Shown here piece after piece: positions 1 to 58,336 of a stretch of DNA of 64,000 nt (the stretch's first letter is position 1; each line of letters starts with the position of its first letter). The position numbers and the translations under genes were made by a program. The notes below the pieces were generated by a model. The model saw nothing but the letters and a program-made list of their open reading frames with translations. It made no database searches and had not been told where the DNA came from. Source of the stretch: Kudoa neothunni (Eukaryota > Animalia > Cnidaria); contig OZ199840.1 in assembly GCA_964304625.1 (NCBI GenBank), positions 115,795-179,794 of the forward strand, in the 5' to 3' direction.

Positions 1-2303
1 GAGGAGCATGTGTTTGAATTGACCGGGCTCGCAGTTGTATCAACTGTTGTAGCTGGGGCAACATTTGTGTCAGTTTCAGTTTGAGTAATAGATTCAGCTC
101 TTGCAATTTTTAATTCATTAATTTCTGATTTTAGACTTTGAATTTTACTAGTACCAGTTTGTCCTTGGTCGGGATTAGGACTGGATTCGGCTGGTGAGCT
201 TGGTGGAGTATTTTGAGTTTCTGGCGCAGCTGCTGGTGTCTGTGATGCTTCGCAGACGTAAACATCTTCAAACCTTTCATCTTTTTTTATTTGGATTGTA
301 TAATGACAAATGGCTTCTGGGACTTTTTTGGACAATTGTGCATTCAATTCCAATCCTTGCTCAGTGTATTTTTGAGTTATTCTCAAGGTTGCCAGATCTA
401 GATTGAGTTAATAAGTTAATTTTTTGAGAAATATACTCGTCGTAACATTTTCATATATGTGTTCCTTGTAATCCTTGTCAACAATGACCTTAACGTCGTA
501 AGAAGTGTTTGGTTCAAGATCAACAATAGTTATTGGTTCTCTACATCTTCCTCTACAGGGATTGGTTTCAGTACATTTAGCGGTGTAAAATGTATTTTTC
601 CCGGCTGGACTTACGTAATACTCGCAGTTTGGCTCATCATATTTATTAGATTCTGCTGTGCCTCCGATAGCTGTTAGTATAGTTGTTGATTCTGTTTTAG
701 TAGGGGCGGCTGCTTGAAAACTTTTATTATCCTCATTATCTTGTAAATATTATTAGTTAAGTTAATATTAAATTATTAGTTATTACTTGTTCTTATAAGT
801 ATTTTTTCTTTGAAGGAAGCTGGATCTGTTATACCAGATTCAATTTCGATGATGTATGGTTTCCCTGCAGACAGCCCTTCAATTACTAGTTTTTCGCAAC
901 CAGTTTTGCATTCACCACCTTCACTACCATCATTCTCCTTTTTAGTGGCCGCGTTACATGAAGTAGTTGAAGACGTGGGGTTGACTTTGTCAGCAGGATA
1001 ATGTTTTAGAGTGCATGTATTGAACTTAGGTTCCCGATGATGGATTTAAAAATCCCCCATCTAACGTTAAACCTTGTTTCGTATAAACAGATAATAAACC
1101 ATCTCCAGTCTCAGATATCGCTATAAGATTTATAATAAAATAATTATAATTATTGACTAAATAAATTACGAAATTTATTTTGGGAAAATCCATCAAAATC
1201 AGCAGATGTTTTTGAAAGATCGTGATTCCTGGTTTGAATTAGAACATTATATATCTCTTTTTCTGCTGTTACAGTTAGCTCAACGTCTTTGCATGGTGCG
1301 TAACACTTTCCTGCAGTATTTCCACAGTTTGATTCGAATTGTTGGTTATTTCCTGCAGATGTACCATCTTTAATACCAAAAACACAGATCTCAGATGATA
1401 GTGTTAAATCTGTGAATTTAAGGACAACATGATTAGCAGCTCCTGTCTTTTTAATAATATAATACTGAGGTTCATAAATAGCCATATTTTTCTTCATATA
1501 CGCATTTGGCATATAGTAAAAGAAACTTGGATAATTAATACATCTCATCTCATAGTGAGGAACCAATAAGTCAAATTCAACCTCATTATTAGTGTTTTCT
1601 GTGTCGCATGTTCCTCCATAGGTACCCGCTTTGAATTGTGCGTCTTTATAGTGAATAGGGCACGCAACTGGAGGACAAGTTTTAGTTAAGAGTTTTAGTT
1701 TTTTGCTCCCATCAACAGATATTGTTGCTTGGGGATTTACCAGTAACGCTAAATTAAATGATGATTTATCGATTCAAAATTATTTAAATTACGTATAGCC
1801 AAACCAAATACTTTCCCACCTTTTGGATAAGTCGCAGCTTTGGCAGCATTCGTATCAGTACTATCGAATACATATATGTATTTTGTTCGTGGGGTGAGTT
1901 TATTATATGTTTCTTTACTAGCTTGACTATTGCAATCTATCACACATTTGGTGTTACTATTAGTACTATCGTACTCGGGACAGTTTTCGATTTCTTCTAA
2001 GCCAGCTGCTGATGTTGAACCGAAACTGTTTGCGGATGCATTGGATATCAATATACGACACTTTTTTCCTTCGCCATAACTTGACCCAACAAGTATATGT
2101 TTTACTTTATTTGAATTACTAGCATCACCGTATTCAATTTGGTATTTGAGTGTTGCTGTGGGAGTAGACGCAGCTTGAGTTCCCGATACTGTTGCATTTT
2201 TTATCATACAAAATAATGCGACTTGCATGACTAACAAAAATTCATGATTGATAATAAGAAAATAAATACATAAGAGGAAATGCAAAAATTTATCTTTAAC
2301 CAT
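1..2303 (-). CDS. Surface-protein paralogue A, 3' end cut by the window edge; one +1 frameshift as assembled
   Basis: Exons 2270-2303, 1793-2230, 1170-1748, 787-1120, 437-739 and <1-397, separated by phase-1 GT-AG introns of 39-49 nt. Spliced N-terminus MVKDKFLHFLLFMQVALFCMIKNA is signal-peptide-like. An extra base in the ccc run at 1033-1035 makes exon 4 334 nt and gives a premature TAA; the frame is restored by comparison with copy C. Confidence 0.85.
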
Positions 2304-6037: not shown

Positions 6038-9000
6038 TTAGGGTAATAATTCGTAAATATGAGCGTTTATTTTTTTCTTCCTGAAAACCACGAAACCAAT
6101 AGCACCCATGATCATAGCTCCAATAGCGGCTACTGCAATGATTCTAAAACAATATCAGTTAAATTATAAAAACACAATAAATTAATACATGACCATGGTT
6201 TTAGAACTAAATGTAAAATTTATTTATGTTAAAAATATTAATTAATAAACCTTGAACTGCTTTTTGCTCCTAAAAGTTACAATTTAAATTATTTTCGAAC
6301 TAATAATGTTTTACCTTGCTCAATCGTAGCCGTCCCATAAACTGTTTTATCGGTGGAACTGTACACAGTCAAGTGATAATTGTTGCCATCTGCTAATCCA
6401 CTGATAGTGAATGATTTGCATGAAGGGTACGTTCTACATCCATTGTCATTTCGTCTCATGCATTTTTTAATAATTGCAATCGATTTGGTACTCGCATTAC
6501 GTAATTCCCACTTACATTTGGATTTTTCATTAAGACTAGATGGTAGGGTGTTTTCTATAACAAATGATTCACCATCCCTTGTTATGGTCACATATATTAT
6601 TTTGTCGTTTTCTGTGGGATTCCCCTTTGGAGCAGCTATTTATTTTAAATATAATAATAATATTGAAAATATTTTTACTAGCTACTAAAGTAATTTCATT
6701 TCGCTCTGATTTTCCCACTGCAGTAATAGACACTTTGTACTCTTCATTTGCATCATAGTCGTTAAATTTAATAGAACTGCACAATGGAAATGAGGAGCAT
6801 GTGTTTGAATTGACCGGGCTCGCAGTTGTATCAACTGTTGTAGCTGGGGCAACATTTGTGTCAGTTTCAGTTTGAGTAATAGATTCAGCTCTTGCAATTT
6901 TTAATTCATTAATTTCTGATTTTAGACTTTGAATTTTACTGGTAATAGTTGGTTGTTGGTCGGGATTAGGACTGGATTCGGCTGGTGAGCTTGGTGGAGT
7001 ATTTTGAGTTTCTGGCACAGCTGCCGGTGTCTGTGATGCTTCGCAGACGTAAACATCTTCAAACCTTTCATCTTTTTTTATTTGGATTGTATAATGACAA
7101 ATGGCTTCTGGGACTTTTTTGGACAATTGTGCATTCAATTCCAATCCTTGCTCAGTGTATTTTTGAGTTATTCTCAAGGTTGCCAGATCTAGATTGAGTT
7201 AATAAGTTAATTTTTTGAGAAATATACTCGTCGTAACATTTTCATATATGTGTTCCTTGTAATCCTTGTCAGCAATGACCTTAACGTCGTAAGGAGTATT
7301 TGGTTCAAGGTCAATTATTGTTATTGGTTCTCTACATCTTCCTCTACAAGGATTGGTTTCGGTACATTTAGCGGTGTAAAATGTATTTTTTCCAGCTGGA
7401 CTTACGTAATACTCGCAGTTTGGCTCATCTTTCTTATCAGTTCTTGCCGTATCTCCAATAGCTGTGAGTGTAGTTGTTGATTCTGTTTTAGTAGGGGCAG
7501 TTTCTTGGAAATTTTTGTTCTCCTCATTATCTTTTAATGATTATTAGTTTTGTTTATTTTTAATTTCAAATTATTACTTGTTCTTATAAGTATTTGTTCT
7601 TTGAAGGAAGTTAAATCTGCCATGCCACTGGACTCAATTTCAATTATATATGGTTTTCCCGGAGCCAGCCCTTCAATTATTAATTTTTCGCAACCAGTTT
7701 TGCAATCACTACTACTATCACCACTCTTTTTAGTGGTCGAATCACATTTAGTGGTTGATGCAGCGTGTTTGATTTTGTCAGCTGGGTAATGACTTAGAGT
7801 ACAACTAGTGAACTTGGTTTCTGATTCTGGCTTAAAGACTGCTGCGTCAAAAGATACACCTTTATTGGTATAATCTGACAATAAACCGTTTCCAGGCTCC
7901 AATATCGCTAATTATTAAATATATAATCTTATTAAATTTAATGATACCAAATTTTTTTTGTGAAAATCCATCTAAATCACCAATAGAAGTCTTTGAAAGG
8001 TCGTGATGCCTGGTTTGTACTAAAACGTTGTAAATATCTTTTGTTGCAGTCAAGGTAAGCTCAACATCTTTGCATGGTGCGTAACATTTTCCATCCTGAT
8101 TTCCACAGTTTGATTCGATTTGTTTGCTATTTCCTGCAGATGTACCATCTTTAATACCAAAAACACAGATCTCAGATGCTAGTGTTAAATCTGTGAATTT
8201 AAGAACAACTTGATTTGCAGCTCCTGTCTTTTTAGTAACATAATACTGAGGCTCGTAAATGGCCATATTATCCTTCATATACGCATTTGGCATATAGTAA
8301 AAGAAACTTGGATAATTAACACATCTCATCTCATAGTGAGGAACCAATAAGTCAAATTCAACCTCATTATCTCTGTTTGCTGTGTCGCATGTTCCTCCTA
8401 CAGTACCCGCTTTGAATTGTGCGTCTTTGTAATGAATAGGACACGCAACTGGAGAACAGGTTTTTGTTAGGAATCTCAATTTCTCGTTATTCTTAGACAT
8501 TGTTACTTGAGGATTTACCAGTAACGCTAAATTGAATAATATGATTTATTGATTAAAATTTGTTTAGATTACGTGTGGCCAATCCAAACACTTTTCCACC
8601 TTTTGGATATGTGTCTGCTTTAACTGTAGCCTCAACAGTATTATCATATACATATATATATTTTGTTCGTGGTGTGAGTTTATCATAAGGAACTTTACTA
8701 CCTTGACTATTACAAGCAATTATGCAATATTGGTTGTTATTCTCGGTGGTACTATATTCAGGGCAGGCCGTTATTTCTTCATATGCAGCTGCCCCTGTTT
8801 GGATACCATCGTTTGCGGCTCCATTGGACTTCAATAATCGGCACTTTTTATTATTTGAATAAGTAGAGCCGCCAAGTGTGTGCTTTATTACATTTGAGCT
8901 AGTGCCACTATCATATTCAATGTGATATTTGAGGGTTGCTGGAGGATCGGGTGCTGCATTATTTTCAATCAAATAAAGAAATGTGATTTGTATAACTATT

Positions 9001-9071
9001 ATTTATTAAATAACTATTACAAAACATTATATACAGAATAAATGATGTAGGAATTTTTGTATTGCTATCAT
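6038..9071 (-). CDS. Surface-protein paralogue B, 10 exons, type I membrane protein with FN3-like Cys-rich modules (881 aa as assembled)
   Basis: Exons 9035-9071, 8573-8995, 7948-8526, 7578-7907, 7228-7530, 6679-7188, 6315-6635, 6251-6269, 6189-6206 and 6038-6143 join in frame through GT-AG introns of 39-47 nt. N-terminus MIAIQKFLHHLFFIQITFLYLIENNA. C-terminus ..SSSKTMVIIIAVAAIGAMIMGAIGFVVFRKKK. FN3-like strands DLEPNTPYDVKV, GLAPGKPYIIEI, GLADGNNYHLTV. Confidence 0.9.
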
Positions 9072-11812: not shown

Positions 11813-14800
11813 CAGTCGAGATTGGATATTGCATGATTCGGTATTGGGTAATTTAAGATTTTCGATATGAAGATATTTACATTGGGACTTAATTTTAGAG
11901 TTATATCATTACTTTACTTATTAAATTAATAATATAGAATAAAAATAAAAAAATATTTTTTCTATGTGCCTCTGATTTAGTATTGTGTCAAAACTTTTTA
12001 TTGCGTAACGTAAATTACCAACGTGACTCGATATTGCGTGATTTCATCTTCAATATATCCAGGGAGCAGCGTGAAATTTCTGAGAAAATTAGAATAATAC
12101 AATATTACAATTCAATAAGATCAATAAAGGGCGCAAAGAAAATGACGTTTGAAAAGTTTAAACTTAGTGGTATGATTATTTTTAATCGATAACAATTTAT
12201 TTCTTAAAGGACATCCAACGCTTGACAGAATACTTTCTCATGAAACCATGCTGAAAAATTCAGATGTTGTAGGAAATAGGAAGAGGCATCCAAATGGAAG
12301 ATTTATCAACATAGACGAATAAGTTTATGAATGGTTTATCAAAAAACGCACCAATGGTCACATTATTTCTGGTGACGTAATACTTGAAATGGCCACCATA
12401 ATTTTCAGAAAGAATGTAGTTCAAAATTTTAAAGCAAGCAGGGGTTGGCTAGCGGGGTTTAAAAAAAGGTTTGGAATCATTTTCATGGTGAAGCTGCGAG
12501 CGCTAACGCTGCGTCTATTGATTCGTGCATCTATGAAAATAAAAATTTGATAAGCATATATAGCCCAAAAAATATCATCAATATTGACGAAACTGGTTTG
12601 TTTTATGAGCAATTACAGAACAGTAGTTATTAAAAGAAGAAAATGACATTAAAGGTAAAAAGCTATCGAAAAAAAGAGTAACGATTTCGGTATCGTGCTC
12701 TTTAAGCGGAGAAAAATTGCCCTTAGTCGTAATTGAGAAATACCAAAACCCCAGGTACTTCAAGGTGGTAAAAAATTTACCTTATGAGTATTATGCCCAA
12801 AAAAATTATTTGATGAACTCTGCTATTTTTTTCCAGATAATGAAAAAATTAAATTTTAAAATGGAGTCAGAACAACGAAAAATACTAATCTTGCTGGACC
12901 AATGTCCAGCACATCCCAAAGATATCACTTGCTTTAGTAATATAAAGTTTCTCTTCTTACCTAAAAATACTACAAGTGTTTTACAGCCACTCGATCTCGG
13001 AGTGATTAATTGTCTTTAAAGTAGATATAAAAAAATATTGTGTAGCCATATGGCATTATGTGATGATCCGTTAAATAATAGATATACATTACTTAATGCA
13101 ATTTTGACACTCCAAGAAGCATGGAACAGTATTCCACCCGAAATTATTGTCAACTATTTTAAAAAGTGGGGCATATTTAACAAAAGTAAAAGCTAATGCG
13201 AACTTCAAAAATTAATCCATTATCATAGGAGATACAGAGACGGAAACAAATGATAAAATTTTCGAAGATGAACAGAGTATATATATATATATATAATAAA
13301 ATTTTAATATTTTTATAGTCGAGGAGGAAACATGGGAGTCCAACTTTGATGATGATAACTTACCTACTTGTGAGGATGATAACGGCGGTGTCTTAACCCA
13401 TTCAGGGTTTTCATTGCGTTTTCGCAACAAAATGTATTTGATTATATAACAACATATAAAATTATTATTTTAAATGTATTCTGTTATTTTAAATACCCAA
13501 ACATATTAATTTATGGAAACAAATATTATTGGAGTTAATTCATATTTTAAGGTTGAACAAAATATGATTTTATGTGCTATTTTTGAAATTCCAACTAAAC
13601 GAACATCAATTAGAGTTTCGCCTAACACAGATCATGAAAATCTTATTAAAAAACATACCAACTGCCATTTGTCATTTAATATCTATATATGATAATGAAT
13701 GCATCAAAGGATTAATGAATAAATATTTATTTGTAAAAAACATGTGTTGCGAAAACGCAACGAAAACCCCGAACGGGGTAATTGTGCGCGCTGCTTTAAG
13801 TATCACTGTATAATGGATCCAAAATCGTACATGAATCTTTTTGATGCAATCAAAGAATATGAAGATAACGAAAATCTAGAGTTGACTGATTTTGTGTTAT
13901 TACCCCCTGAAAAAGTCGACACTCTTACAGATACTGAGGATAATTTTGAATCCAATTTTAATGGCATATGTGACATCAATTTAATTCCTGAGACGTGTGG
14001 AGAAATTGAAGTATTTTCTGAGGCTCTTGAATCCTTCGTAAATGATGATACCTTGATATGGACTGATAAAACTAATGTCGATTCTACTAAAGAAAAATCA
14101 AAATTTTTATGTCAGAATGAGACTATATTAATCAATCGGAATATGGATAATTTTTCCATCAATACTTGAAGGGAACTTAAATTCTTATGGAACTTTTTTG
14201 GAGTTATTTGATGAAAATTTATTTACACGCATCGTGAAACAATCTAATTTATATGCGAGCCAGAATAACAACCATGATTTTCATGTTACGATTAGTGAAA
14301 TGAAATCATTTATCGGTATTCTGATTTTGTCTGGTTATCATAGATTAGCACGCCAGTCTATGTATGGGGAATCTTCTCCAGACGCTGGTGTTGAACTCGT
14401 TAAAAGTTCAATGACCTACAAACGCTTCGAATCTATAAAAAAAATCATCCATTTTAATAATAATTCAAATATTGACACCATCGATAGATTTTTCAAGGTA
14501 CGCCCTTTAATTCAAGAATTTAACAAAAATTTCAAAAAATTTGGAATATTCGAAAAATATATATCTGTGGACGAGCATATGGTACCTTATACTGGTAGGC
14601 ATTCCGCTAAAATGTTTATGAAAAATAAACCAATTAGATTTGGCTTCAAGCAATGGGTTATGTCATCACCCTCCGGTTACATGTATAGTTTTGACGTGTA
14701 TAATGGAAAGTCAGCAAATTATGATAAAAAATATGGTTTGGGTGGTAGTGTAGTAATCTCTTTTGCGGATGAAGTAAAAAAATGAAAAAGATCTCAATAT

Positions 14801-16663
14801 GTTCTTCGATAATTTTTTTATTTCTCATAAATTATTACAAGAGCTCAAAAGAAGAAATATCAAGGCTACTGGAACCTTAAGATTAAACAGAATATCAAAT
14901 TGCCCTGTTACTCCCCAAAAAGTAATGGCAAAAAAACCAAGGGGAGAATTTGAGATGTTTTCTGATGATCAACAACGTATTCATTGCATTCAATGGAATG
15001 ATACAAAACCTGTTATCGCATTGAGTAATTGCTACACCGCTCACCCTCTCCAAAGCATCAAAAGATACTGTAGGTCGAAGAAAAAAGAAATTACTATTTG
15101 TCAGCCATTTATGATATGTGTATATAATAAGTTTATGGGTGGAGTAGATATTGCCAATAATTTAATTTCTTGTTATAGAATTAACATAAAAGGAAAAAAA
15201 TGGTATTGGCCCATTTTTACGAATATGATATCAATGGCAGTAGTAAATTCATGGAGGATTTATAATATTGTAAATAACACACAAATTGACTTGTTGAAAC
15301 ATGTCAGGAATATAGTGACTGACTTGGTAACATCCGCAAAAACCAGCATTGGCCGAAAGTCTCTGTTGGGTAAATTGCAGAACGCTAATCTATGTAATAA
15401 ACCAACATTGGTGTCTCATCCTCACAAAATAAGACGTAGGTGTGTGGTATGTAAAAATATTACCGTCCATATTTGTAAAAGTTATGGAAATCATATTCAT
15501 ATAAAGTGCTCGGGGTTGTTCCACAAGTAAATGATTAAAATTATAATTTTCTTGTAGATAACTTTTTTTCCTCATGTATTTGACAAATATTATTTATGTG
15601 CGTTGTAATCTTATTCCCATACAAGGAAAGTTTTTCATTGCATTTTTGGAATCTAAATACTTCTCGAATATACTCTTTTATAATTTAATTTTTTTCGATT
15701 ATTTTTTTAGATGATTATTATAATCCTTATTAAGTCTAATACCAGATATGTAAAAACTACAAAATTGTAAGTTAAATGGGTTAAAGGGGTAAAATTTAAT
15801 CTCACATGGCATAATAAGGGATTAGTTAGAGGTTTTGTTACTAGTAAGGAAATATTGTTGAAATATGAACCAAAAATAATTTTTTATCGCTAATCTGGGT
15901 CAAGAATACCGAGTGACACTCAAACGTACTACAACCCATATCATTAAAAAATATAGAAAACAAAAAAATATAAATTTTTCTATAATATGTCACATAGGTA
16001 TTACTAAATTGTTGTTTAAAATTCATTGTTTTTGTTAATTTCATTTGTCACGTGACACGCAAATTTATATACCACAAGTTTTTCGTTGCGTTTTCGCAAC
16101 ACTGCAAAAAACTACGTATCTTTGTAAGGAGATAAAATTTTAAAATAGTTTTTTTTAAATCAATAATAATATTGTTAGTTTTACTTTATATTATAATCTT
16201 ACAAAAATACAAAATTGGAACCTGAATGGGATAATATCTATAGTGAATCCAATTCAGAATGAAATCGAATCTGATGAGGAAGAACCAAAAGTTCCAATAA
16301 AAGATATAAAGTATGCCGTAAGTACATTAAGGAAGGTGTTTATTCAGGAAGATCCATCTGGACTCATCGATCTTCATCCGATAATGGATCGAATTTTAAA
16401 AATATCATCTCAAAGATTGCACCAAACTAAAATTACTTCATTTTTTCATAAAAATTAATAATTTTGTCTGGCTGAATTAAATAAAATTCCTCATATTTAT
16501 TTTATTTCACTAGCAATGATTTAAGGTAGGATAAACGCACAAAACAAGTTTAAATTGAATATTTTTACAAGTGCGCATTTGCATGATTCGATATTGCGTA
16601 AAACCTTTTTATTACGTAATTTTTGTGACCTAGGTAAAATTACGCAATATCGAATCTCGACCG
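11813..16663 (+). mobile_element. pogo/Tigger-like DNA transposon with decayed transposase, interrupted by a piggyBac
   Basis: TA-flanked TIRs CAGTCGAGATTGGATATTGC / CGGTCGAGATTCGATATTGC. CENP-B HTH-like segment (VYEWF, FKASRGWL), NIDETG, LLLDQCPAH, PKNTTSVLQPLDLGVI. C-terminal PCNA-binding-like QTKITSFF at 16243-16458. Stops and frameshifts present. Confidence 0.9.
13397..16230 (+). mobile_element. piggyBac element with near full-length transposase (13813-15530, two frameshifts)
   Basis: TTAA|CCCATTCAGG ... CCTGAATGGG|ATAA. Subterminal repeat TTGCGTTTTCGCAACA occurs three times. Catalytic motifs SVDEHM, FFDNFF, YNKFMGGVD, KKWYW and a C-terminal Cys/His-rich region. Confidence 0.95.
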
Positions 16664-17726: not shown

Positions 17727-20700
17727 TTAATTTTTCTTCTTGAAAACCACGAAACCAATAGCACCCATGATCATAGCACCAATAGCCGCCACTGCAATTA
17801 TTCTAAAACAATATTAGTTAAATTGTAGGAACATAATAAAGTAATACATGACCATGGTTTTAGAACTAAATAAAAAATTTAATTATTTTAAAAATATTAA
17901 TTAATAAACCTTGAACTGCTTTTGGCTCCTAAAAGTTACAGTTTTAATTATTTTCGAAGTAATAATGTTTTACCTTGCTCAATAGTGGCTGTCCCATAAA
18001 TTGTTGGATTGATAGAACTGTACACAGTCAAATGATAATTGTTGCCATCTGCTAATCCACTGATAGTGAATGATTTGCATGGGGGGAACCTTTTACATCC
18101 TTTATCCCTTGGACTCATGCATTTTTTAATAATTGCTATCGATTTGGTACTCGCATTACGTAATTCCCACTTACATTTGGATTTTTCATTAAGACTAGAT
18201 GGTAGGGTGTTTTCTATAACAAATGATTCACCATCCCTTGTTATTGTCACATATATTATTTTGTCGTTTTCTGTGGGATTCCCCTTTGGAGCAGCTATTT
18301 ATTTTAAATATTAATATAATAATAATATCGAAAATATTTTTACTAGCTACTAAAGTAATTTCATTTCGCTCTGATTTTCCCACTGCAGTAATAGACACTT
18401 TATACTCTTCATTTGCATCATAGTCGCTGAATTTAATAGAACTGCACAATGGAAATGAGGAGCATGTGTTTGAATTGACCGGGCTCGCAGTTGTATCAAC
18501 TGTTGTAGCTGGGGCAACATTTGTGTCAGTTTCAGTTTGAGTAATAGATTCAGCTCTTGCAATTTTTAATTCATTAATTTCTGATTTAGACTTTGAATTT
18601 TACTAGTACCAGTTTGTCCTTGGTCGGGATTAGGGCTGGATTCGACTGGTGAGCTTGGTGGAGTATTTTGAGTTTCTGGCGCAGCTGCCGGTGTCTGTGA
18701 TGCTTCGCAGACGTAAACATCTTCAAACCCGTCATCTTTTTTTATTTGGATTGTATAATGACAAATGGCTTCTGGGACTTTTTTGGACAATTGTGCATTT
18801 AATTCCAATCCTTGTTCAGTGTATTTTTGAGTTATTCTCAAGGTCGCCAGATCTAGATTGAGTTGAATAAGTTAATATTTTGATATATATATATATACTA
18901 GTTATAACATTTGTATATATGTGTTCTTTGTACTCTTTGTCAGCAATGACTTTAACGTCGTAAGAAGTGTTTGGTTCAAGATCAACAATAGTTATTGATT
19001 CTCTACATCTTCCTCTACAGGGATTGGTTTCAGTACATTTAGCGGTGTAAAATGTATTTTTCCCAGCAGGACTTACGTAATATTCACAATTGGGTTCTTC
19101 ATTTTTATTTGCCTCTGCGTTGCCTCCAATAGCTGTTAGTGTAGTTCTAGATTCTGTCTTAGTAGGGGCAGTTTCTTGGAAATTTTTATTATCCTCATTA
19201 TCTTGTAAATATTATTACTTAAGTTAATATTAAATTTTTAGTTATTACTTGTTCTTATAAGTATTTGTTCTTTGAAGGAAGCTGGATCTGATATGCCACT
19301 GGATTCAATTTCAATTATATATGGTTTTCCCGGAGCCAGCCCTTCTATTATTAATTTTTCGCAACCAGTTTTACATTCGCCGCCATCACCACTACTACTA
19401 CTACCACCACTATTCTTTTTAGTGGTCGAATCACATGTAGTGGTTGATGCAGTGTGTTTGATTCTGTCAGCTTGGTAATGATTTAGAGTACAACTAGTGA
19501 ATTTAGGATCTGATGATGGATTTAAAAATCTCCCATCAAACGTTAAACCTTGTTTCGTATAAACAGATAATAAACCAACTCCAGTCTCAGATATTGCTAA
19601 AAAATTTATAAATTAACACCGAATTAAATAAATTACGAAATTTTTTTTGAGAAAATCCATCTAAATCACTAAGAGAAGTTTTTGAAAGATCGTGATTTCT
19701 GGTTTGAATTAGAACATTATATATTTCTTTTTCTGCAGTTAGAGTAAGCTCAACGTCTTTGCATGGTGCGTAACACTTTCCTGCAGTATTTCCACACTTT
19801 GATTCAAAGGCATCACCCGATGCTGCACTTTTAGCGTCTTTAATGCCAAAAACACAGATCTCAGATGATAACGTTAAATCTGTGAATTTAAGACCAACTT
19901 GATTAGGAGCTCCTGTCTTTTTAGTCACATAATACTGAGGCTCATAAATAGCCACATTTTTCTTCATATATACGTTTGGCATATTATAGAAGAAGCTTGG
20001 ATAATTCAGACACCTTATTTCATAATGGAGGAATTAATAAGTCAAATTCAACATCATTAATTGTGTTGTCCGCGTCACATGTTCCTACAGCGGTACCCGC
20101 GTTGAATTGTGCGTCTTTATAGTGAATTGAGCAACCAACTGGAGGGCAAGTTTTAGTTAAGAGTTTTAGTTTTTTCTCTCATCAACAGATATTTTTGTTT
20201 GGGGATTTACCAACAACGCTAAATTTAAAGATGATTTATCGAATAAAAATTATTTAAATTACGTATGGCCAAACCAAATACTTTTCCACCTTTTGGATAT
20301 GTCTCTGCTTTAGCAGTGGCCTCATCACCATTATCATATACATACATGTATTTTGTTCTTGGAGAGAACTTATTGTATGAAACTTTGCTAGCTTGACTAT
20401 TGCAATCTATCACGCATTTGGTGTTTTCATTATTATTCCCAGGGCACTCAGTTATTTCTCCATACGCGGCTGCTTCTGTATTGGATATCAATATACGACA
20501 CTTTTTTCCTTCGCCATAACTTGACCCAACAAGTATATGTTTTATTAAATTTGAATTACTAGCATCACCGTATTCAATTTGGTATTTGAGTGTTGCTGTG
20601 GGAGTAGACGCAGCTGGAGTTCCCGATACTGTTGTATTTTTAATTATACAAAAGAATGCGATTTGCATGGCTAATAAAGATTCATTATTAATAATAAAAA

Positions 20701-28169: not shown

Positions 28170-31100
28170 TTAATTTTTCTTCTTGAAAACCACGAATCCA
28201 ATAGCACCCATGATCAAAGCTCCAATAGCTGCCACTGCAATTATTCTAAAATAATATTAGTTAAATTGTAGGAACATAATAAAGTAATACATGACCATGG
28301 TTTTAGAACTAAATAAAATATTTAATTATTTTAAAAATATTAATTAATAAACCTTGAACTGCTTTTGGCTCCTAAAAGTTACAATTTTAAATTATTTTCG
28401 AAGTAATAATGCTTTACCTTGCTCAATCGTAGCCGTCCCATAACTGTTTTATCGGTGGAACTGTACACAGTCAAATGATAATTGTTGCCATCTGCTAATC
28501 CACTGATAGTGAATGATTTGCATGGGGGGAACTTTTTACATCCTTTATCCCTTGGACTCATGCATTTTTTAATAATTGCTATCGATTTGGTACTCGCATT
28601 ACGTAATTCCCACTTACATTTGGATTTTTCATTAAGACTAGATGGTAGGGTGTTTTTCTATAACAAATGATTCACCATCCCTTGTTATTGTCACATATAT
28701 TATTTTGTCGTTTTCTGTGGGATTCCCCTTTGGAGCAGCTATTTATTTTAAATATTAATATAATAATAATATCGAAAATATTTTTACTAGCTACTAAAGT
28801 AATTTCATTTCGCTCTGATTTTCCCACTGCAGTAATAGACACTTTATACTCTTCATTTGCATCATAGTCGCTGAATTTAATAGAACTGCACAATGGAAAT
28901 GAGGAGCATGTGTTTGAATTGACCGGGCTCGCAGTTGTATCAACTGTTGTAGCTGGGGCAACATTTGTGTCAGTTTCAGTTTGAGTAATAGATTCAGCTC
29001 TTGCAATTTTTAATTCATTAATTTCTGATTTTAGACTTTGAATTTTACTAGTACCAGTTTGTCCTTGGTCGGGATTAGGACTGGATTCGTCTGGTGAGCT
29101 TGGTGGAGTATTTTGAGTTTCTGGCACAGCTGCCGGTGTCTGTGATGCTTCGCAGACGTAAACATCTTCAAACCCGTCATCTTTTTTTATTTGGATTGTA
29201 TAATGACAAAATGGCTTCTGGGACTTTTTTGGACAATTGTGCATTTAATTCCAATCCTTGTTCAGTGTATTTTTGAGTTATTCTCAAGGTTGCCAGATCT
29301 AGATTGAGTTAATAAGTTAACTTTTTGAGAAATATACTCGTCGTAACATTTTCATATATGTGTTCCTTGTAATCCTTATCAGCAATGACCTTAACGTCGT
29401 AAGAAGTATTTGGTTCAAGATCAACAATAGTTATTGGTTCTCTACATCTTCCTCTACAGGGATTGGTTTCAGTACATTTAGCGGTGTAAAATGTATTTTT
29501 CCCGGCTGGGACTTATGTAATACTCGCAGTTTGGCTCACCATTTTTATTTGTCTCTGGTTCGCCTCCAATAGCTGTTAATGTAGTTGTTGATTCTGTTTT
29601 AGTAGGGGAGGTTGCTTGAAAATTTTTATTATCCGTTTTATCTTTTAAAGATTATTAGTTTTGCTGATTTTTAATTTCAAATTATTACTTGTCCATATCA
29701 ATATTTGTTCGTTTAAAGTAGCTGGATTGCTGCCACCAGTTAATGCGATTTCAAGAATATAAGGTTTTCCTGCAGTTAATTCTTCAATTACTAATTTTTC
29801 GCAACCAATTTTGCAATCACCACTATTATCAGTCTTTTTAGTGGCCGTGTTACATTTAGTGATTGATGCAGTGTGTTTGATTTTGTCAGCTGGGTAATGT
29901 TTTAAAGTGCAACCAGTAAACTGTGTGCCTGATCCTGGCTTAAAAACTGCTGCGTCAAAAGATACACCTTTATTGGTATAATCTGACAACAAACCGTTTC
30001 CAGTCTCCGATATTGCTTAAAAATTTATAAAAGTTAATATTGACTAAAATAAATTACGAAATTTTTTTTGAGAAAATCCATCTAAATCACCAATAGAAGT
30101 CTTTGAAAGATCGTGATGCCTGGTTTGTACTAAGACGTTGTAAATATCTTTTGTTGCAGTCAGGGTAAGCTCAACATCTTTGCATGGTGCGTAACATTTT
30201 CCATCCTGATTTCCACAGTTTGATTCGAATTGTTTGCTATTTCCTGCAGATGTTCCATCTTTAATACCAAAAACACAGATCTCAGATGCTAGTGTTAAAT
30301 CTGTGAATTTAAGAACAACTTGATTTGCAGCTCCTGTCTTTTTAGTAACATAATACTGAGGCTCGTAAATGGCCATATTATCCTTCATATACGCATTTGG
30401 CATATAGTAAAAGAAACTTGGATAATTAACACATCTCATCTCATAGTGAGGAACCAATAAGTCAAATTCAACCTCATTATCTCCGTTTGCTGTGTCGCAT
30501 GTTCCTCCTACAGTACCCGCTTTGAATTGTGCGTCTTTGTAATGAATAGGACACGCAACTGGAGAACAGGTTTTTGTTAGGAATCTCAATTTCTCGTTAT
30601 TCTTAGACATTGTTACTTGAGGATTTACCAGTAACGCTAAATTGAATAATATGATTTATTGATTCAAATTTGTTTAGATTACGTATGGCCAATCCAAACA
30701 CTTTTCCACCTTTTGGATAAGTCGCTACATTAACAGTGCTCATTTCAGTATTATCATATACATATATATATTTTGTTCGTGGGGTGAGTTTATCATAAGG
30801 AACTTTACTATCTTCACTTTCGCAAGAAATTATGCAATAACGACTGCTATTTTCGGTGGTACTATATCCAGGGCAGTCCGTTATTTCTTCATATGCAGCT
30901 GCCCCTGTTTGGATACCATCGTTTGCGGCTCCATTAGACTTCAATAATCGGCACTTTTTATTATTTGAATAAGTAGAGCCACCAAGTGTGTGCTTTATTA
31001 CATTTGAGCTAGTGCTACTATCATATTCAATGTGATATTTGAGTGTTGCTGGAGGATCGGGTGCTGCATTACTTTCAATCAAATAAAGAAATGTAATTTG

Positions 31101-55337: not shown

Positions 55338-58336
55338 TTAATTTTTCTTCTTGAAAACCACGAAACCAATAGCACCCATGATCATAGCTCCAATAGCCGC
55401 TACAACGATTACTCTAAAATGATGTCAGTTAAATTTTAGGAATATAACAAAGTAATACATGACCACGGTTTTAGAACTAAATAAAAGAATTAATTTATTT
55501 CAAAAATATTAATTAATAAACCTTGAACTGCTTTTGGCTCCTAAAAGTTACAATTTAAATTATTTTCGAAGTAATAATGTTTTACCTTGCTCAATAGTGG
55601 CCGTCCCATAAACTGTTTTATCGGTGGAACTGTACACAGTCAAGTGATAATTGTTGCCATCTGCTAATCCACCGATAGTGAATGATTTGCATGAAGGGTA
55701 CGTTCTACATCCATTGTCATTTCGTCTCATGCATTTTTTAATAATTGCTATCGATTTGGTACTCGCGTTACGTAATTCCCACTTACATTTGGATTTTTCA
55801 TTAAGACTCGACGGAAGCGTGTTTTCTATAACAAATGATTCACCATCCCTTGTTATGGTCACATATATTATTTTGTCGTTTTCTGTGGGATTCCCCTTTG
55901 GAGCAGCTATTTATTTTAAATATAATAATAATATCGAAAATATTTTTACTAGCTACTAAAGTAATTTCATTTCGCTCTGATTTTCCCACTGCAGTAATAG
56001 ACACTTTATACTCTTCATTTGCATCATAGTCGTTGAATTTAATAGAACTGCACAATGGAAATGAGGAGCATGTGTTTGAATTGACCGGGCTCGCAGTTGT
56101 ATCAACTGTTGTAGCTGGGGCAACATTTGTGTCAGTTTCAGTTTGAGTAATAGATTCAGCTCTTGCAATTTTTAATTCATTAATTTCTGATTTTAGACTT
56201 TGAATTTTACTAGTACCAGTTTGTCCTTGGTCGGGATTAGGACTGGATTCGGCTGGTGAGCTTGTTGGAGTATTTTGAGTTTCTGGCGCAGCTGCCGGTG
56301 TCTGTGATGCTTCGCAGACGTAAACATCTTCAAACCTTTCATCTTTTTTTATTTGGATTGTATAATGGCAAATGGCTTCTGGGACTTTTTTGGACAATTG
56401 TGCATTCAATTCCAATCCTTGCTCAGTGTATTTTTGAGTTATTCTCAAGGTTGCCAGATCTAGATTGAGTTAATAAGTTAACTTTTTGAGAAATATACTC
56501 GTCGTAACATTTTCATATATGTGTTCTTTGTACTCCTTATCAGCAATGACCTTAACGTCGTAAGAAGAGTTTGGTTCAAGGTCAATTATTGTTATTGATT
56601 CTCTACATCTTCCTCTACAGGGGTTAGTTTCAGTACATTTAGCGGTGTAAAATGTATTTTTCCCGGCTGGACTTATATAATACTCACAGTTTGGCTCATT
56701 TTTCGGATTGCTTTCGTTGTTACCTCCAATGGCTGTTAGTATAGTTGTTGATTCTGTTTTAGTAGGGGCAGTTGCTTGAAAATTTTTGTCATCATTTTTA
56801 TCTTTGAAAACTTTTAGTTACTGCTAGTTAATTTTCAATTGTTACCTGTCCTTATAAATATTTGTTCTTTAAAATTATCTGGATCTGTTATACCAGATTC
56901 AATTTCGATGATGTATGGTTTTCCTGGTAATAGTTGCTCAATTACTACCTCAGTGCATTCTATTTTACAGGTATCAGCTCCACTGACACTCGTACTGCTA
57001 TTGCATTTCGATACCGTAGTTGTAGCCGGCTTAATTGTGTCAGCAGGATAATGCTTTATAGTACAAGTAGTGAATGCAGTCCCTGATGGTTTATATACGG
57101 CAGCATCCAATTTTACACCCCCCTTTTTCAAATCAGACAAAAGACCATCTCCACTTTCCAAAATGGCTATAAAAACGAATATACAATATTGTTACGAAAA
57201 ATAAAATACCAAACTTTTTCTGAGAAAACCCATCTAGATTACCGGTAATGGTTTTAGATAGGTCGTGGTGTTTGGTTTGAATCAAGACTTGGTAGAATGC
57301 TTTTGCTTCAGTTACAGTAAGTTCCACATCTTTACAAGGTACGTAACACTTTCCGGCAGTATTACCACATTTTGATTCAAACACAGCGTTAGCTGCTTCC
57401 CGTTTACCGCCCTTAATGCTGAATATGCAAATTTCAGCGGATAATGTTAAATCTGTGAATTTAAGAGCAACTTGATTAGCAACTCCCGCCCTTTTTGTTA
57501 CGTAATACTGAGGTTCATAAATAGCAATATTTTTCTTCATGTATGCATTTGGCATATAGTAAAAGAAACTTGGATAATTCACGCATCTCATCTCATAATG
57601 AGGAATCAATACGTCAAACTCAACATCATTCTCTGTGTTTCCTGTATCGCATGTTTGCCCTGCATTACCCCCTTTGAATTGTGCGTCCTTATAATGGATT
57701 GGGCACGCAACTGGAGAGCAAGTTTTTGTTAGAAGTTTCAATTTTTCTGTAGCCATAGAGATCGATACTTGAGGATTGACCAATAATGCTAAATTTGATG
57801 AAATTATTTATCAATTCAAAGTTATTTAGATTACGTATGGCTAAACCAAACACCTTTCCACCTCTTGTATACTGCTGTGATTTAACAGTCCCATCTTCAC
57901 CAACATATACATACATGTATTTTGTTCTAGGAGAAAGTTTATCATATGGTACTTTACTTGTTTGGCTATTGCAATCGATTATGCATTTTGTGGTTTCGGC
58001 AGTTTCATGTCCAGGGCATTCTGAAATTTCTTTAAGATCAGCTGGAGTACTTGAGTCGAGTATAGTTTCTGCTTCGTTTGACCTCAATATACGACATTTT
58101 CCTGTAGCATAACTTGTTCCGCCAAGTGTATGCTTAACTACATTGGAGCTAGCGGAGCTATCATATTCAATTCGATAATTTAGAATAGCTAATGGAGTAG
58201 ACGTTGATGGAGAAGCGGGCGCCGTTGCATTTTCCATCGTACAAAATAATGCGATTTGTATGACTAATAAAGATTCACTGATGATAATAAAAAACTATAT
58301 ACATAGGAGGTAATTCAAAAATTTATCCCTAACCAT
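55338..58336 (-). CDS. Surface-protein paralogue E, intact, 10 exons, 869 aa type I membrane protein
   Basis: Exons 58303-58336, 57835-58263, 57210-57788, 56846-57166, 56499-56801, 55950-56459, 55586-55906, 55522-55540, 55459-55476 and 55338-55413 total 2610 nt in one open frame. Signal-like MVRDKFLNYLLFIQIALFCTMENA; TM VVIVIVVAAIGAMIMGAIGFVVF followed by KKKN*. Intron 1 has an in-frame TAG, supporting that it is spliced. Confidence 0.92.

What the first reader, a model, noticed from the sequence alone, without database searches (positions are those of the whole stretch)
6315..8995. Repeated FN3-like module with a 4-Cys staple enclosing a hypervariable loop
Seen: six modules share C-x(~16-30)-C-[loop]-C-x(3-5)-C followed by an L-x-P-x3-Y-x-hydrophobic strand or a degenerate form of it; the first half of exon 3 is a seventh 4-Cys variant. 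The C2-C3 loop is where the copies differ most. Exon 2: PEYDSTNSNTK / PEYSTTENNNQY / PGNNNENTK / PGYSTTENSSRY / PGHETAETTK. Exon 4: NAATKKENDGSEGGE / DSTTKKSGDSSSD / DSTTKKNSGGSSSSGDGGE / NTATKKTDNSGD / NSSTSVSGADT. These cysteines are invariant. Known: canonical FN3 lacks disulfides. Inference: a beta-sandwich scaffold presenting CDR-like disulfide-closed loops, possibly an undescribed domain variant.
Basis: partly seen in the sequence, partly recalled or inferred. Interest (0 to 1): 0.8.

Follow-up and report, generated by a model that had tools for sequence, protein, structure and literature searches.

The report
Disulfide-stapled FN3 modules, Kudoa surface protein
The stretch is the ectodomain of an intact membrane-protein gene of the tuna-muscle parasite Kudoa neothunni, built from seven fibronectin-III-like modules that each carry four near-invariant cysteines and variable loops; it belongs to an undescribed family of several hundred genes that may form the parasite's host-facing surface.

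Summary
Window 6315-8995 (minus strand) is exons 2-7 of a 9-exon, 875-codon gene for a type I membrane protein. Six modules carry C-x16-25-C-loop-C-x3-5-C followed by an LxPxxxY-type strand, and the first half of exon 3 is a seventh 4-Cys variant.

- **Fold:** AlphaFold models of exon 4 (pLDDT 80) and exon 3 (pLDDT 74) match only FN3 or tandem-FN3 structures (Z 6.7-7.8). No Pfam or PDB sequence match reaches threshold.
- **Organism:** the genome matches the published Kudoa neothunni assembly.
- **Family:** at least 150 scored copies of 496 candidates, on all three chromosomes, with a fixed exon order. The only relatives elsewhere are unnamed short contigs from four public samples.
- **Variability:** it is concentrated in loops, but not only in the C2-C3 loop. 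That loop ranks first in 2 of 6 modules, and the BC- and FG-like loops are about as variable.
- **Selection:** loop dN/dS is 0.2-1.2, so diversifying selection is not shown.
- **Recombination:** the copies are gene-conversion mosaics and about half are broken.
- **Untested:** disulfide pairing (only one C1+C4 co-loss lineage bears on it) and expression (no usable RNA data).

Earlier agents of this scan reported the same family on other DNA of this genome.

The parts
9035..9071 (-). Exon 1: start codon and first 12 codons of a predicted signal peptide (MIAIQKFLHHLF)
   Evidence: The ATG and the GTAT donor are conserved in all five window copies. The model keeps the frame through all nine exons. 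This exon is inferred; there is no RNA support.
8573..8995 (-). Exon 2: rest of the signal peptide plus module 1 (C-x25-C-x12-C-x3-C, LTPRTKYIY). It is the most membrane-distal module and the most diverged.
   Evidence: Identity to paralogs is 53-87%. Pairwise dS is 0.74 and dN/dS 0.31.
8727..8762 (-). C2-C3 loop of module 1 (PEYSTTENNNQY)
   Evidence: Mean entropy 2.42 against a module mean of 1.69; rank 5 of 114 windows, with the FG-like segment TVEATVKADTYP higher. Loop dN/dS is 0.36.
7948..8526 (-). Exon 3: two beta-sandwich domains, a 4-Cys variant (C-x4-C-x17-C-x21-C) followed by an FN3-like module (C-x19-C-x6-C-x3-C). This is the best-conserved part of the family.
   Evidence: AlphaFold model: pLDDT 73.6, pTM 0.48. 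Residues 92-193 match FN3 at Z 7.0, rmsd 2.7 A, 81 aligned. Residues 2-80 match Ig-like domains at Z 6.8. The whole model matches tandem-FN3 cytokine-receptor modules at Foldseek E 4e-4. 150 genomic matches were scored out of 496 candidates, all at E < 1e-53.
7578..7907 (-). Exon 4: FN3-like module (C-x18-C-x13-C-x3-C, LAPGKPYII)
   Evidence: AlphaFold model: pLDDT 80, pTM 0.71, seven strands. All top 50 VIA matches are FN3, Z 6.7-7.8. Foldseek top hits are all FN3, probability 0.9-1.0. At least 152 genomic matches.
7705..7743 (-). C2-C3 loop of the exon 4 module (DSTTKKSGDSSSD). In the model it is an enlarged C'-E (DE) loop.
   Evidence: It is the most variable window of the module (rank 1 of 97, entropy 2.47 against 1.53). 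Its length ranges from 6 to 19 residues. dN/dS is 0.85 against 0.29 for the rest of the module.
7228..7530 (-). Exon 5: Thr-rich linker plus FN3-like module (C-x16-C-x5-C-x3-C, LEPNTPYDV)
   Evidence: Sub-threshold Pfam fn3 hit, E 0.07, 13.8 bits against a cut-off of 25. The loop TETNP is nearly invariant among close paralogs.
6679..7188 (-). Exon 6: module whose C2-C3 loop is an 81-residue insert rich in Pro, Ser and Thr, with a helix-like stretch (KIQSLKSEINELKIARAES)
   Evidence: Loop dN/dS is 1.17 against 0.39 for the rest. Loop length ranges from 2 to 96 residues across the family.
6315..6635 (-). Exon 7: membrane-proximal FN3-like module (C-x17-C-x7-C-x5-C, LADGNNYHL), nearly identical among paralogs
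   Evidence: Sub-threshold Pfam fn3 hit, E 0.14. Identity to paralogs is 86-100%. dS is 0.19.
6251..6269 (-). Exon 8: inferred 19-nt micro-exon, needed to keep the frame between exon 7 and the transmembrane exon
   Evidence: Splice-site and frame logic only. Not verified by RNA.
6038..6143 (-). Exon 9: transmembrane helix (IIAVAAIGAMIMGAIGFVVF), short basic tail and stop codon
   Evidence: Paralogs end KKKN or KKKK straight after the helix. This copy alone reads on for 10 more residues.
3..2195 (-). Paralog copy wA, cut by the window start; its exon 4 is disrupted
17730..20632 (-). Paralog copy wC, with frameshifts in exons 3 and 6
28173..31082 (-). Paralog copy wD. It is 93-100% identical to this gene over exons 1-3. 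It has frameshifts in exons 5, 6 and 7.
55344..58237 (-). Paralog copy wE, intact at the exon level

Best explanation
The region encodes the ectodomain of a single-pass (type I) surface protein of the myxozoan Kudoa neothunni.

**Architecture.** A signal peptide is followed by a chain of seven beta-sandwich modules: one Ig/FN3-like variant and six FN3-like modules, each on a phase 1-1 exon. A transmembrane helix and a 4-14-residue basic tail follow.

**Cysteines.** Each FN3-like module carries four near-invariant cysteines. In the exon 4 model they lie at the N-terminal pole of the sandwich:
- C1 at the start of strand C
- C2 at the end of strand C'
- C3 and C4 just before strand E

The C2-C3 segment is therefore an enlarged DE loop. 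The most likely pairing is C2-C3 closing that loop and C1-C4 tying strand C to strand E. This is inferred, not measured.

**Variation.** Sequence and length variation sits mainly in the BC, DE and FG loops of the outer modules. It arises from relaxed constraint plus duplication and segmental gene conversion among several hundred paralogs, about half of which are broken in the sampled subfamily. Conversion keeps the membrane-proximal modules nearly uniform.

**Function (inferred).** A host-facing coat or adhesin family whose outer modules differ from copy to copy.

**Shown:** gene structure, fold class, family size, loop-concentrated variability, mosaicism.
**Inferred:** disulfide pairing, surface location, role at the host interface.
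For: - **Gene model.** Nine exons in frame, 876 codons, all module exons phase 1-1, introns of 39-107 bp. A predicted signal peptide and a transmembrane helix are present.
- **Fold.** The exon 4 model has pLDDT 80 and the FN3 strand order; all top 50 structural matches are FN3. The exon 3 model is a tandem FN3-like pair. The module profile hits the E-F region of real multi-FN3 proteins in a scan of 1.84 billion proteins.
- **Cysteines.** Nearly invariant in about 50 paralogs and present in the fragments from other samples. One lineage (L042, L039, with L043 having lost C4 only) has lost C1 and C4 while keeping C2 and C3.
- **Variability.** Strand entropy 1.07, BC+DE+FG loops 2.16, AB+CC'+EF loops 1.59.
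- **Real coding genes.** Scaffold dN/dS is 0.18-0.45.
- **Family.** At least 152 matches for exon 4 and 150 scored of 496 candidates for exon 3, on all three chromosomes. Exon order is fixed in about 45 sampled loci.
- **Mosaicism.** The nearest paralog switches at least eight times along the gene, including to copies 2.7 Mb away. dS falls from 0.7 in exons 2-4 to 0.18 in exons 6-7.
- **Broken copies.** 7 of 15 subfamily copies carry frameshifts or stops.
- **Organism.** 40.26 Mb in three chromosomes plus an 18-kb contig, a (TAAACC)n tract at one chromosome end only, and about 45-bp introns all match PMC12239612.
Against: - No RNA or protein evidence exists. Three metatranscriptome runs carrying the host's species label held no read at all, which is no test of expression.
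- Surface location rests only on a predicted signal peptide and transmembrane helix.
- The paralogs' C-terminal KKKN or KKKK tail also fits a di-lysine ER-retrieval motif.
- Loop dN/dS is never clearly above 1 (0.22-1.17). The loops may simply be unconstrained, low-complexity Ser/Thr/Asn/Pro segments.
- Structural Z scores of 7-8 are middling, and sequence similarity to FN3 is confined to the E-F region (hhalign probability 19%).
- The frameshifts could partly be errors in a low-coverage long-read assembly.
- Disulfide pairing is untested.
Confidence: 0.6

Rival explanations
1. The family consists of structural or cell-cell adhesion proteins of the parasite itself, for example holding together the cells of the plasmodium or sporoblast, or forming part of the spore coat. 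The loop variation would then be neutral drift shuffled by gene conversion, with no role in dealing with the host.
For: FN3 arrays are typical of animal adhesion and matrix proteins (hits). Loop dN/dS is at or below about 1, so nothing requires selection for diversity. Exon 3 and the membrane-proximal modules are strongly conserved.
Against: Several hundred copies in a genome with only about 5,300 predicted genes (PMC12239612) is far more than a structural role usually needs. The distal-to-proximal divergence gradient, the mosaic structure and the many broken copies resemble contingency families more than housekeeping adhesins.
Confidence: 0.22
2. The family is a self/non-self (allorecognition) or mate-recognition system. 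The membrane-distal variable modules would bind like or unlike partners, as the polymorphic Ig-like Alr proteins do in the cnidarian Hydractinia. The comparison with Hydractinia comes from my own knowledge and was not tested here.
For: The same general design is present: type I membrane proteins made of beta-sandwich modules, with the most variable module furthest from the membrane, clustered in arrays. Myxozoans are cnidarians (PMC12239612).
Against: No sequence or specific structural link to Alr proteins was found. Several hundred paralogs with about half broken is unlike known allorecognition loci. No population data are available to test for allelic polymorphism.
Confidence: 0.07
3. The copies are non-functional repeat debris, for example cargo of a transposable element, and the apparent modules are relics that make no protein.
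For: About 45% of the genome is annotated as repeats (PMC12239612). A split PiggyBac-type transposase lies between copies at 14198-15530. About half of the sampled copies are broken. No RNA evidence exists.
Against: This gene and 6 others of the 15 sampled are open through all exons, with conserved splice sites and phases. Scaffold dN/dS is 0.18-0.45 at dS up to 0.74. The cysteines and fold-defining residues are nearly invariant across about 50 paralogs and in other species' contigs at 27-57% identity.
Confidence: 0.04

Closest known systems
Fibronectin type III domain (Pfam PF00041, E-set/Ig-like beta-sandwich)
   Same: Seven-strand sandwich of about 100 residues. The EF-loop and F-strand motif L-x-P-x3-Y (tyrosine corner) is present. 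There is one module per phase 1-1 exon, arranged in tandem in a type I membrane protein. Structural matches reach Z 6.7-7.8, and the profile hits the E-F region of true FN3 repeats.
   Different: No module reaches the Pfam cut-off; the best score is 13.8 bits against 25. There is no PDB sequence match. The strand-B tryptophan is replaced by Phe. Four near-invariant cysteines sit at the N-terminal pole, and the DE loop is enlarged to between 5 and 81 residues.
First FN3 fold of the class I cytokine-receptor homology domain (two disulfides, CX9-10CXWX26-32CX10-15C; PMC1963337)
   Same: It is an FN3 fold that naturally carries four conserved cysteines. The tandem-FN3 pair of exon 3 has cytokine-receptor chains as its best Foldseek matches (E 4e-4).
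   Different: The cysteine spacing is different (C-x16-25-C-x5-81-C-x3-5-C). There is no WSXWS motif and almost no tryptophan. There are seven modules rather than one pair. No sequence similarity was detected.
Monobodies / adnectins (engineered FN3 binders diversified in the BC, DE and FG loops)
   Same: In the exon 4 module the three most variable segments map to the BC, DE and FG loops, which lie at the same pole. Monobody structures are among the best Foldseek matches.
   Different: Those are man-made libraries selected for binding. Here no binding partner is known, and the loops show no excess of amino-acid-changing substitutions.
Variant surface protein families of parasites (Trypanosoma VSG, Plasmodium var/rifin, Giardia VSP; the VSP-like genes reported in the myxozoan Sphaerospora molnari, bioRxiv 10.64898/2026.02.11.705288)
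   Same: A very large family in arrays, with mosaic gene conversion, many broken copies, variable outer parts, conserved membrane-proximal parts and a very short cytoplasmic tail.
   Different: The fold is unrelated (FN3). There are no CXXC motifs and cysteine content is only about 3%. Switching or one-at-a-time expression is unknown. The host is a metazoan parasite, not a protist.

Membership tests
Fibronectin type III fold | Seven-strand beta-sandwich (A-B-E / C'-C-F-G) of about 90-110 residues | tested here: met
   The exon 4 model (pLDDT 80) has strands at residues 8-13, 16-19, 34-41, 50-54, 75-78, 85-93 and 102-108. All top 50 VIA matches are FN3, Z 6.7-7.8, rmsd about 3 A over about 83 residues. 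Foldseek top hits are all FN3. The second half of exon 3 matches FN3 at Z 7.0.
Fibronectin type III fold | Sequence match to Pfam PF00041 at the gathering score (25 bits) | tested here: not met
   Best scores are 13.8 bits (exon 5, E 0.07) and 12.8 bits (exon 7, E 0.14); the other exons give nothing. Only 1 of 43 exon 4-type paralogs gives a weak fn3 hit.
Fibronectin type III fold | EF-loop Leu/Pro and F-strand Tyr (tyrosine corner) motif | tested here: met
   LTPRTKY, LAPGKPY, LEPNTPY and LADGNNY are present, with degenerate forms in exons 3 and 6. L80, G83 and Y86 are invariant or nearly so in 43 paralogs. This stretch aligns to the FN3 E-F region.
Fibronectin type III fold | Conserved Trp in strand B | tested here: not met
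   Exons 2-6 contain no Trp and exon 7 has one. The equivalent position in exon 4 reads GVSF, so Phe replaces Trp.
Class I cytokine-receptor homology domain | CX9-10CXWX26-32CX10-15C in the first FN3 fold and WSXWS in the second (PMC1963337) | tested here: not met
   The spacings differ and WSXWS is absent from all exons. The resemblance is limited to the tandem-FN3 shape.
Immunoglobulin superfamily domain | Disulfide between strands B and F, with a Trp in strand C | tested here: not met
   In the model the cysteines lie at the start of strand C, the end of strand C' and before strand E, with none in strand F. The Trp is absent.
Parasite variant-surface-antigen system (functional class) | Large multigene family with segmental gene conversion and a pool of broken copies | tested here: met
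   At least 150 scored of 496 candidates. The nearest paralog switches at least eight times along the gene. 7 of 15 sampled copies are broken.
Parasite variant-surface-antigen system (functional class) | Excess of amino-acid-changing substitutions in exposed loops | tested here: not met
   Pooled pairwise NG86 dN/dS for the loops is 0.22-1.17, with the highest values 0.85 (exon 4) and 1.17 (exon 6). Site models that allow for recombination were not run.
Parasite variant-surface-antigen system (functional class) | Surface exposure, and switching or one-at-a-time expression | not testable with these tools
   No run with parasite RNA was found. Three RNA runs gave zero reads, which is no test.
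Giardia-type VSP | [quoted passage not shown] | tested here: not met
   There are 28 Cys in about 816 ectodomain residues and no CXXC motif. The tail is KKKN or KKKK.

The most novel reading that the evidence does not exclude
The several hundred FN3-array genes are a true surface-variation system of an animal (cnidarian) parasite. Few copies would be expressed at a time, and new mosaic outer modules would be assembled by gene conversion from intact and broken donors. Natural FN3 modules would present disulfide-framed BC/DE/FG loops as the variable face, a metazoan counterpart of VSG or var built on a monobody-like scaffold.
Probability: 0.2. Interest if true: 0.85.

Novelty: new variant of a known kind. 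Interest (0 to 1): 0.6.

Why it matters
Myxozoans are damaging fish parasites, and the molecules at their host interface are almost unknown. The paper that published this genome does not mention this family (PMC12239612; zero occurrences of 'gene famil' or 'surface'). My literature searches found no description of it either.

Several hundred copies would be a sizeable part of a gene set of only about 5,300. That makes the family an obvious candidate for immune evasion, adhesion or diagnostics.

For protein science, it offers a natural FN3 scaffold with two conserved cysteine pairs framing an expandable DE loop. Its variation falls on the same three loops that protein engineers randomise in monobodies.

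Tried and rejected
- **Pfam** on all six exons and on 43 paralogs gave nothing above threshold.
- **PDB** sequence search with the module profile gave no hit at E <= 1.
- **Word-based protein search:** exon 4 gave no hit; exon 3 gave one unnamed 163-aa fragment.
- **ESM Atlas** by features: best score 0.81, not informative.
- **RNA evidence:** no holder run is recorded as RNA, and three metatranscriptome runs with the host's species label gave zero reads, so expression remains untested.
- **Larger sample:** The cysteine co-loss and variability statistics therefore rest on about 50 genes.
- **Apparent loss of C1 alone in exon 5-type modules** was an artefact. The exon 5 model had cross-hit exon 4-type modules and left C1 outside the aligned part.
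- **A YxxL sorting motif in the tail (YELL)** is rejected as a family feature. Only this copy has the extension; the paralogs stop at KKKN or KKKK.
- **Cytokine-receptor membership** is rejected: wrong cysteine spacing and no WSXWS.
- **Disulfide geometry** could not be read from the models, because only summaries are returned, not coordinates.
Full report
**What is there.** The finding lies on the minus strand of an AT-rich eukaryotic window. Three-frame translation and the splice sites give a nine-exon gene:
- exon 1: 9071-9035
- exon 2: 8995-8573
- exon 3: 8526-7948
- exon 4: 7907-7578
- exon 5: 7530-7228
- exon 6: 7188-6679
- exon 7: 6635-6315
- exon 8: 6269-6251
- exon 9: 6143-6038

All introns are GT..AG and 39-107 bp long. 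The exon lengths sum to 2628 nt, exactly 876 codons including the stop. Exons 2-7 all start and end in phase 1, which is the usual arrangement for shuffled extracellular modules in animals.

Exon 1 and the start of exon 2 read as a signal peptide (MIAIQKFLHHLF / IQITFLYLIENNAAP...). The ATG and donor site are conserved in all five window copies. Exon 9 encodes a transmembrane helix and a short basic tail. Exon 1 and the 19-nt exon 8 are inferred from frame and splice logic only.

Every search used single exons by reference, and the script only summed lengths.

**Observation check.** The cysteine pattern is real. The spacings are:
- exon 2: C-x25-C-x12-C-x3-C
- exon 3, second half: C-x19-C-x6-C-x3-C
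- exon 4: C-x18-C-x13-C-x3-C
- exon 5: C-x16-C-x5-C-x3-C
- exon 6: C-x17-C-x81-C-x5-C
- exon 7: C-x17-C-x7-C-x5-C

Each is followed by an LxPxxxY-type strand or a degenerate form of it. The first half of exon 3 is a different 4-Cys arrangement (C-x4-C-x17-C-x21-C).

**Organism.** The window is G000:C3:115795-179794, in a 40.26-Mb genome of four contigs (17.15, 12.04 and 11.05 Mb, plus about 18 kb). PMC12239612 describes a 40.2-Mb K. neothunni assembly recovered from yellowfin tuna data, with three chromosomes, a circular mitochondrion, 49-bp introns and a (TAAACC)n tract at one chromosome end. In G000 that repeat occurs at one place only, the last 535 bases of contig 2. I take the identification as sound.

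**Family.** Exon 4 has at least 152 matches in the genome. Exon 3 has 150 scored matches out of 496 first-look candidates, all at E < 1e-53 and at least 47% identity over the full length, on all three chromosomes. The densest cluster is the first 0.46 Mb of chromosome 3, where the window lies.

In about 45 loci that I fetched from all chromosomes, the six module exons occur once each and in the same order. In some loci two or three exons are fused into one open frame. This is therefore a gene family with a fixed seven-module ectodomain, not a free-running repeat.

**Fold.**
- *Exon 4.* With 43 paralogs as the alignment, AlphaFold gave a model with pLDDT 80 and pTM 0.71 and seven strands. The exhaustive structural search returned only FN3 domains in its top 50 (Z 6.7-7.8, rmsd about 3 A over about 83 of 109 residues). 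Foldseek's best hits were also all FN3 (monobodies, insulin-receptor and fibronectin modules; probability 0.9-1.0, E 0.007-0.1). The ESM Atlas shape search agreed (TM 0.5-0.62). These scores are middling, but the lists are uniform.
- *Exon 3.* With 35 sequences the model had pLDDT 73.6 and pTM 0.48. It is a tandem pair. Residues 92-193 match FN3 (Z 7.0, rmsd 2.7 A, 81 aligned). Residues 2-80 match Ig-like sandwich domains (Z 6.8). The whole model matches tandem-FN3 cytokine-receptor modules (Foldseek E 4e-4).
- *Sequence level.* The link to FN3 is weak. There are sub-threshold Pfam fn3 hits for exons 5 and 7 only and no PDB sequence hit.
- *Profile scan.* The exon 4 profile, run against 1.84 billion proteins, found 34 proteins at E <= 0.001. 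Eleven are short fragments matching most or all of the profile. Nearly all of the long hits I examined are named or Pfam-confirmed multi-FN3 proteins, matched repeatedly over profile positions 64-100, which is the strand E / LxPxxxY / strand F region. One example has Pfam fn3 at E 1e-119. hhalign placed EKLIIEGLAPGKPYIIEIESSG on RELVIIDLQTDTAYTIEVRAQN of such a repeat.

**Where the cysteines sit.** Reading the model's strands as A 8-13, B 16-19, C 34-41, C' 50-54, E 75-78, F 85-93 and G 102-108:
- C1 (residue 35) opens strand C.
- C2 (residue 54) ends strand C'.
- C3 (residue 68) and C4 (residue 72) precede strand E.

All four cysteines therefore lie at the N-terminal pole, and the C2-C3 segment is an enlarged DE loop. 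The second module of exon 3 has the same layout, with C1 at residue 121 at the start of strand 120-127.

I could not measure the cysteine distances, because the tools return no coordinates. The only evidence on pairing is evolutionary. In the exon 4-type module, two paralogs (L042, L039) have lost C1 and C4 together and a relative (L043) has lost C4 alone, while all three keep C2 and C3. That fits C1-C4 and C2-C3 pairing, but it is one lineage. In the exon 3 variant, one copy has lost its first and third cysteines together.

**Variability.** Across about 45-50 paralogs, variation is clearly concentrated in loops. In the exon 4 module:

| Region | Mean entropy |
|---|---|
| Strands | 1.07 |
| BC+DE+FG loops | 2.16 |
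| AB+CC'+EF loops | 1.59 |

The BC+DE+FG loops exceed the strands at p = 2e-7 and the other pole's loops at p = 0.047.

The C2-C3 loop is the single most variable window in exons 4 and 6, and fifth in exons 2 and 7, where the FG-like loop equals or beats it. It is unremarkable in exon 5 (16th of 96) and in the second half of exon 3 (29th of 88). Its length ranges from 6 to 19 residues in exon 4 and from 2 to 96 in exon 6. It is enriched in Ser, Thr, Asn, Pro and Ala.

The hotspot is the loop pole as a whole, not only the stapled loop.

**Selection and recombination.** Pooled pairwise Nei-Gojobori estimates on 12-13 close paralogs:

| Exon | Scaffold dN/dS | C2-C3 loop dN/dS |
|---|---|---|
| 2 | 0.30 | 0.36 |
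| 3 | 0.21 | 0.41 |
| 4 | 0.29 | 0.85 |
| 5 | 0.45 | 0.22 |
| 6 | 0.39 | 1.17 |
| 7 | 0.18 | 0.53 |

The scaffold is under purifying selection, so these are real coding genes. The loops evolve at roughly the silent rate, so 'CDR-like' positive selection is not shown.

Silent divergence itself falls from about 0.7 (exons 2-4) to 0.38 (exon 5) and 0.18 (exons 6-7). Along this gene the nearest paralog changes at least eight times:
- wD, at 93-100% identity, over exons 1-3
- L013
- wC across the exon 4 loop
- L005, at 99% identity, although it lies 2.7 Mb away
- L007 and L010
- L002 and L007, at 100% identity, near the 3' end

That is segmental gene conversion, and it also explains why the membrane-proximal modules are so uniform.

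Of 15 subfamily copies, 7 are open in all exons, including this one, and 7 carry frameshifts or stops. Some of these defects could be errors in a low-coverage assembly.

**Relatives elsewhere.** No named protein in NCBI or UniProt matches the whole module. The only relatives are unnamed fragments on 0.6-2.4-kb contigs from two ENA metagenome assemblies (ERZ795007, ERZ28624939) and two SRA runs (SRR31175926, SRR33849685). They carry the same four cysteines. They also carry the same exon order, at 27-57% identity and 19-36% GC. They probably come from other myxozoans.

**Literature.** I found no paper describing the family. The genome paper has no occurrence of 'gene famil' or 'surface' in its text. 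The Sphaerospora molnari work reports unrelated VSP-, RIFIN- and ETRAMP-like families.

**Expression.** This is untested. The runs that hold the DNA come from one study and one sample and are not recorded as RNA. Three metatranscriptomes with the host's species label gave zero reads.

**Interpretation.** The structural reading is well supported: a type I membrane protein made of disulfide-bearing FN3-like modules. The function is inferred. The size of the family, its arrays, the distal-to-proximal divergence gradient, the mosaicism and the broken copies point to a host-facing coat or adhesin family. A purely structural or adhesion role, or a recognition role, is not excluded.

Four-cysteine FN3 folds are already known in class I cytokine receptors, with a different spacing and a WSXWS motif that is absent here (PMC1963337). 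The module is therefore a new variant of a known fold, not a new fold.

**Earlier notes of this scan.** Several earlier follow-ups described the same family on other DNA of this genome. My independent tests agree with them on species, fold, mosaicism and the lack of demonstrated positive selection.

Noticed in passing
window 14198-15530 (+): Two adjacent open frames together match a PiggyBac-type transposase (PF13843, E 2e-43 and 2e-28). It is a split or broken transposase lying between two copies of the surface-protein gene.
   Followed up: partly
window 6038-6143 (-), and the TM exons of paralogs (e.g. window 17730-17813, 28173-28256, 55344-55424): Paralogs end four or five residues after the transmembrane helix (KKKN, KKKK, KKKRD). 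Formally this is a C-terminal di-lysine KKxx motif. This gene alone has lost that stop and reads on to RKKKINAHIYELLP.
   Followed up: partly
330 modules from the window and loci L002-L048: N-x-S/T glycosylation sequons are more than two-fold depleted: 223 observed against 479 +/- 18.5 in composition-matched shuffles. This gene has only 2 in about 816 ectodomain residues, despite being rich in Asn, Ser and Thr. The paralogs are not independent, so the z-score overstates the case.
   Followed up: partly
window 6679-7188 (-), exon 6: The C2-C3 loop of this module is an 81-residue Pro/Ser/Thr-rich insert with a heptad-like stretch (KIQSLKSEINELKIARAES). It could be a mucin-like stalk or an oligomerisation helix. 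Its length ranges from 2 to 96 residues in the family.
   Followed up: no
G000:C2:12039536-12040069: The (TAAACC)n tract occurs at this one chromosome end only, matching the telomere motif reported for Kudoa neothunni (PMC12239612).
   Followed up: yes
L052 (SRR31175926 contig, 2419 bp, GC 19%) and L053 (SRR33849685 contig, 2166 bp, GC 29%): Short contigs from unrelated public runs carry the same exon order at 27-41% identity. They probably come from other, unsequenced myxozoans present in those samples.
   Followed up: partly
L014, L024-L031, L038, L040 and others: In many distant family members, two or three module exons (3-4-5 or 6-7) form one open frame. This points to intron loss, or to in-frame introns, within the family.
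   Followed up: no
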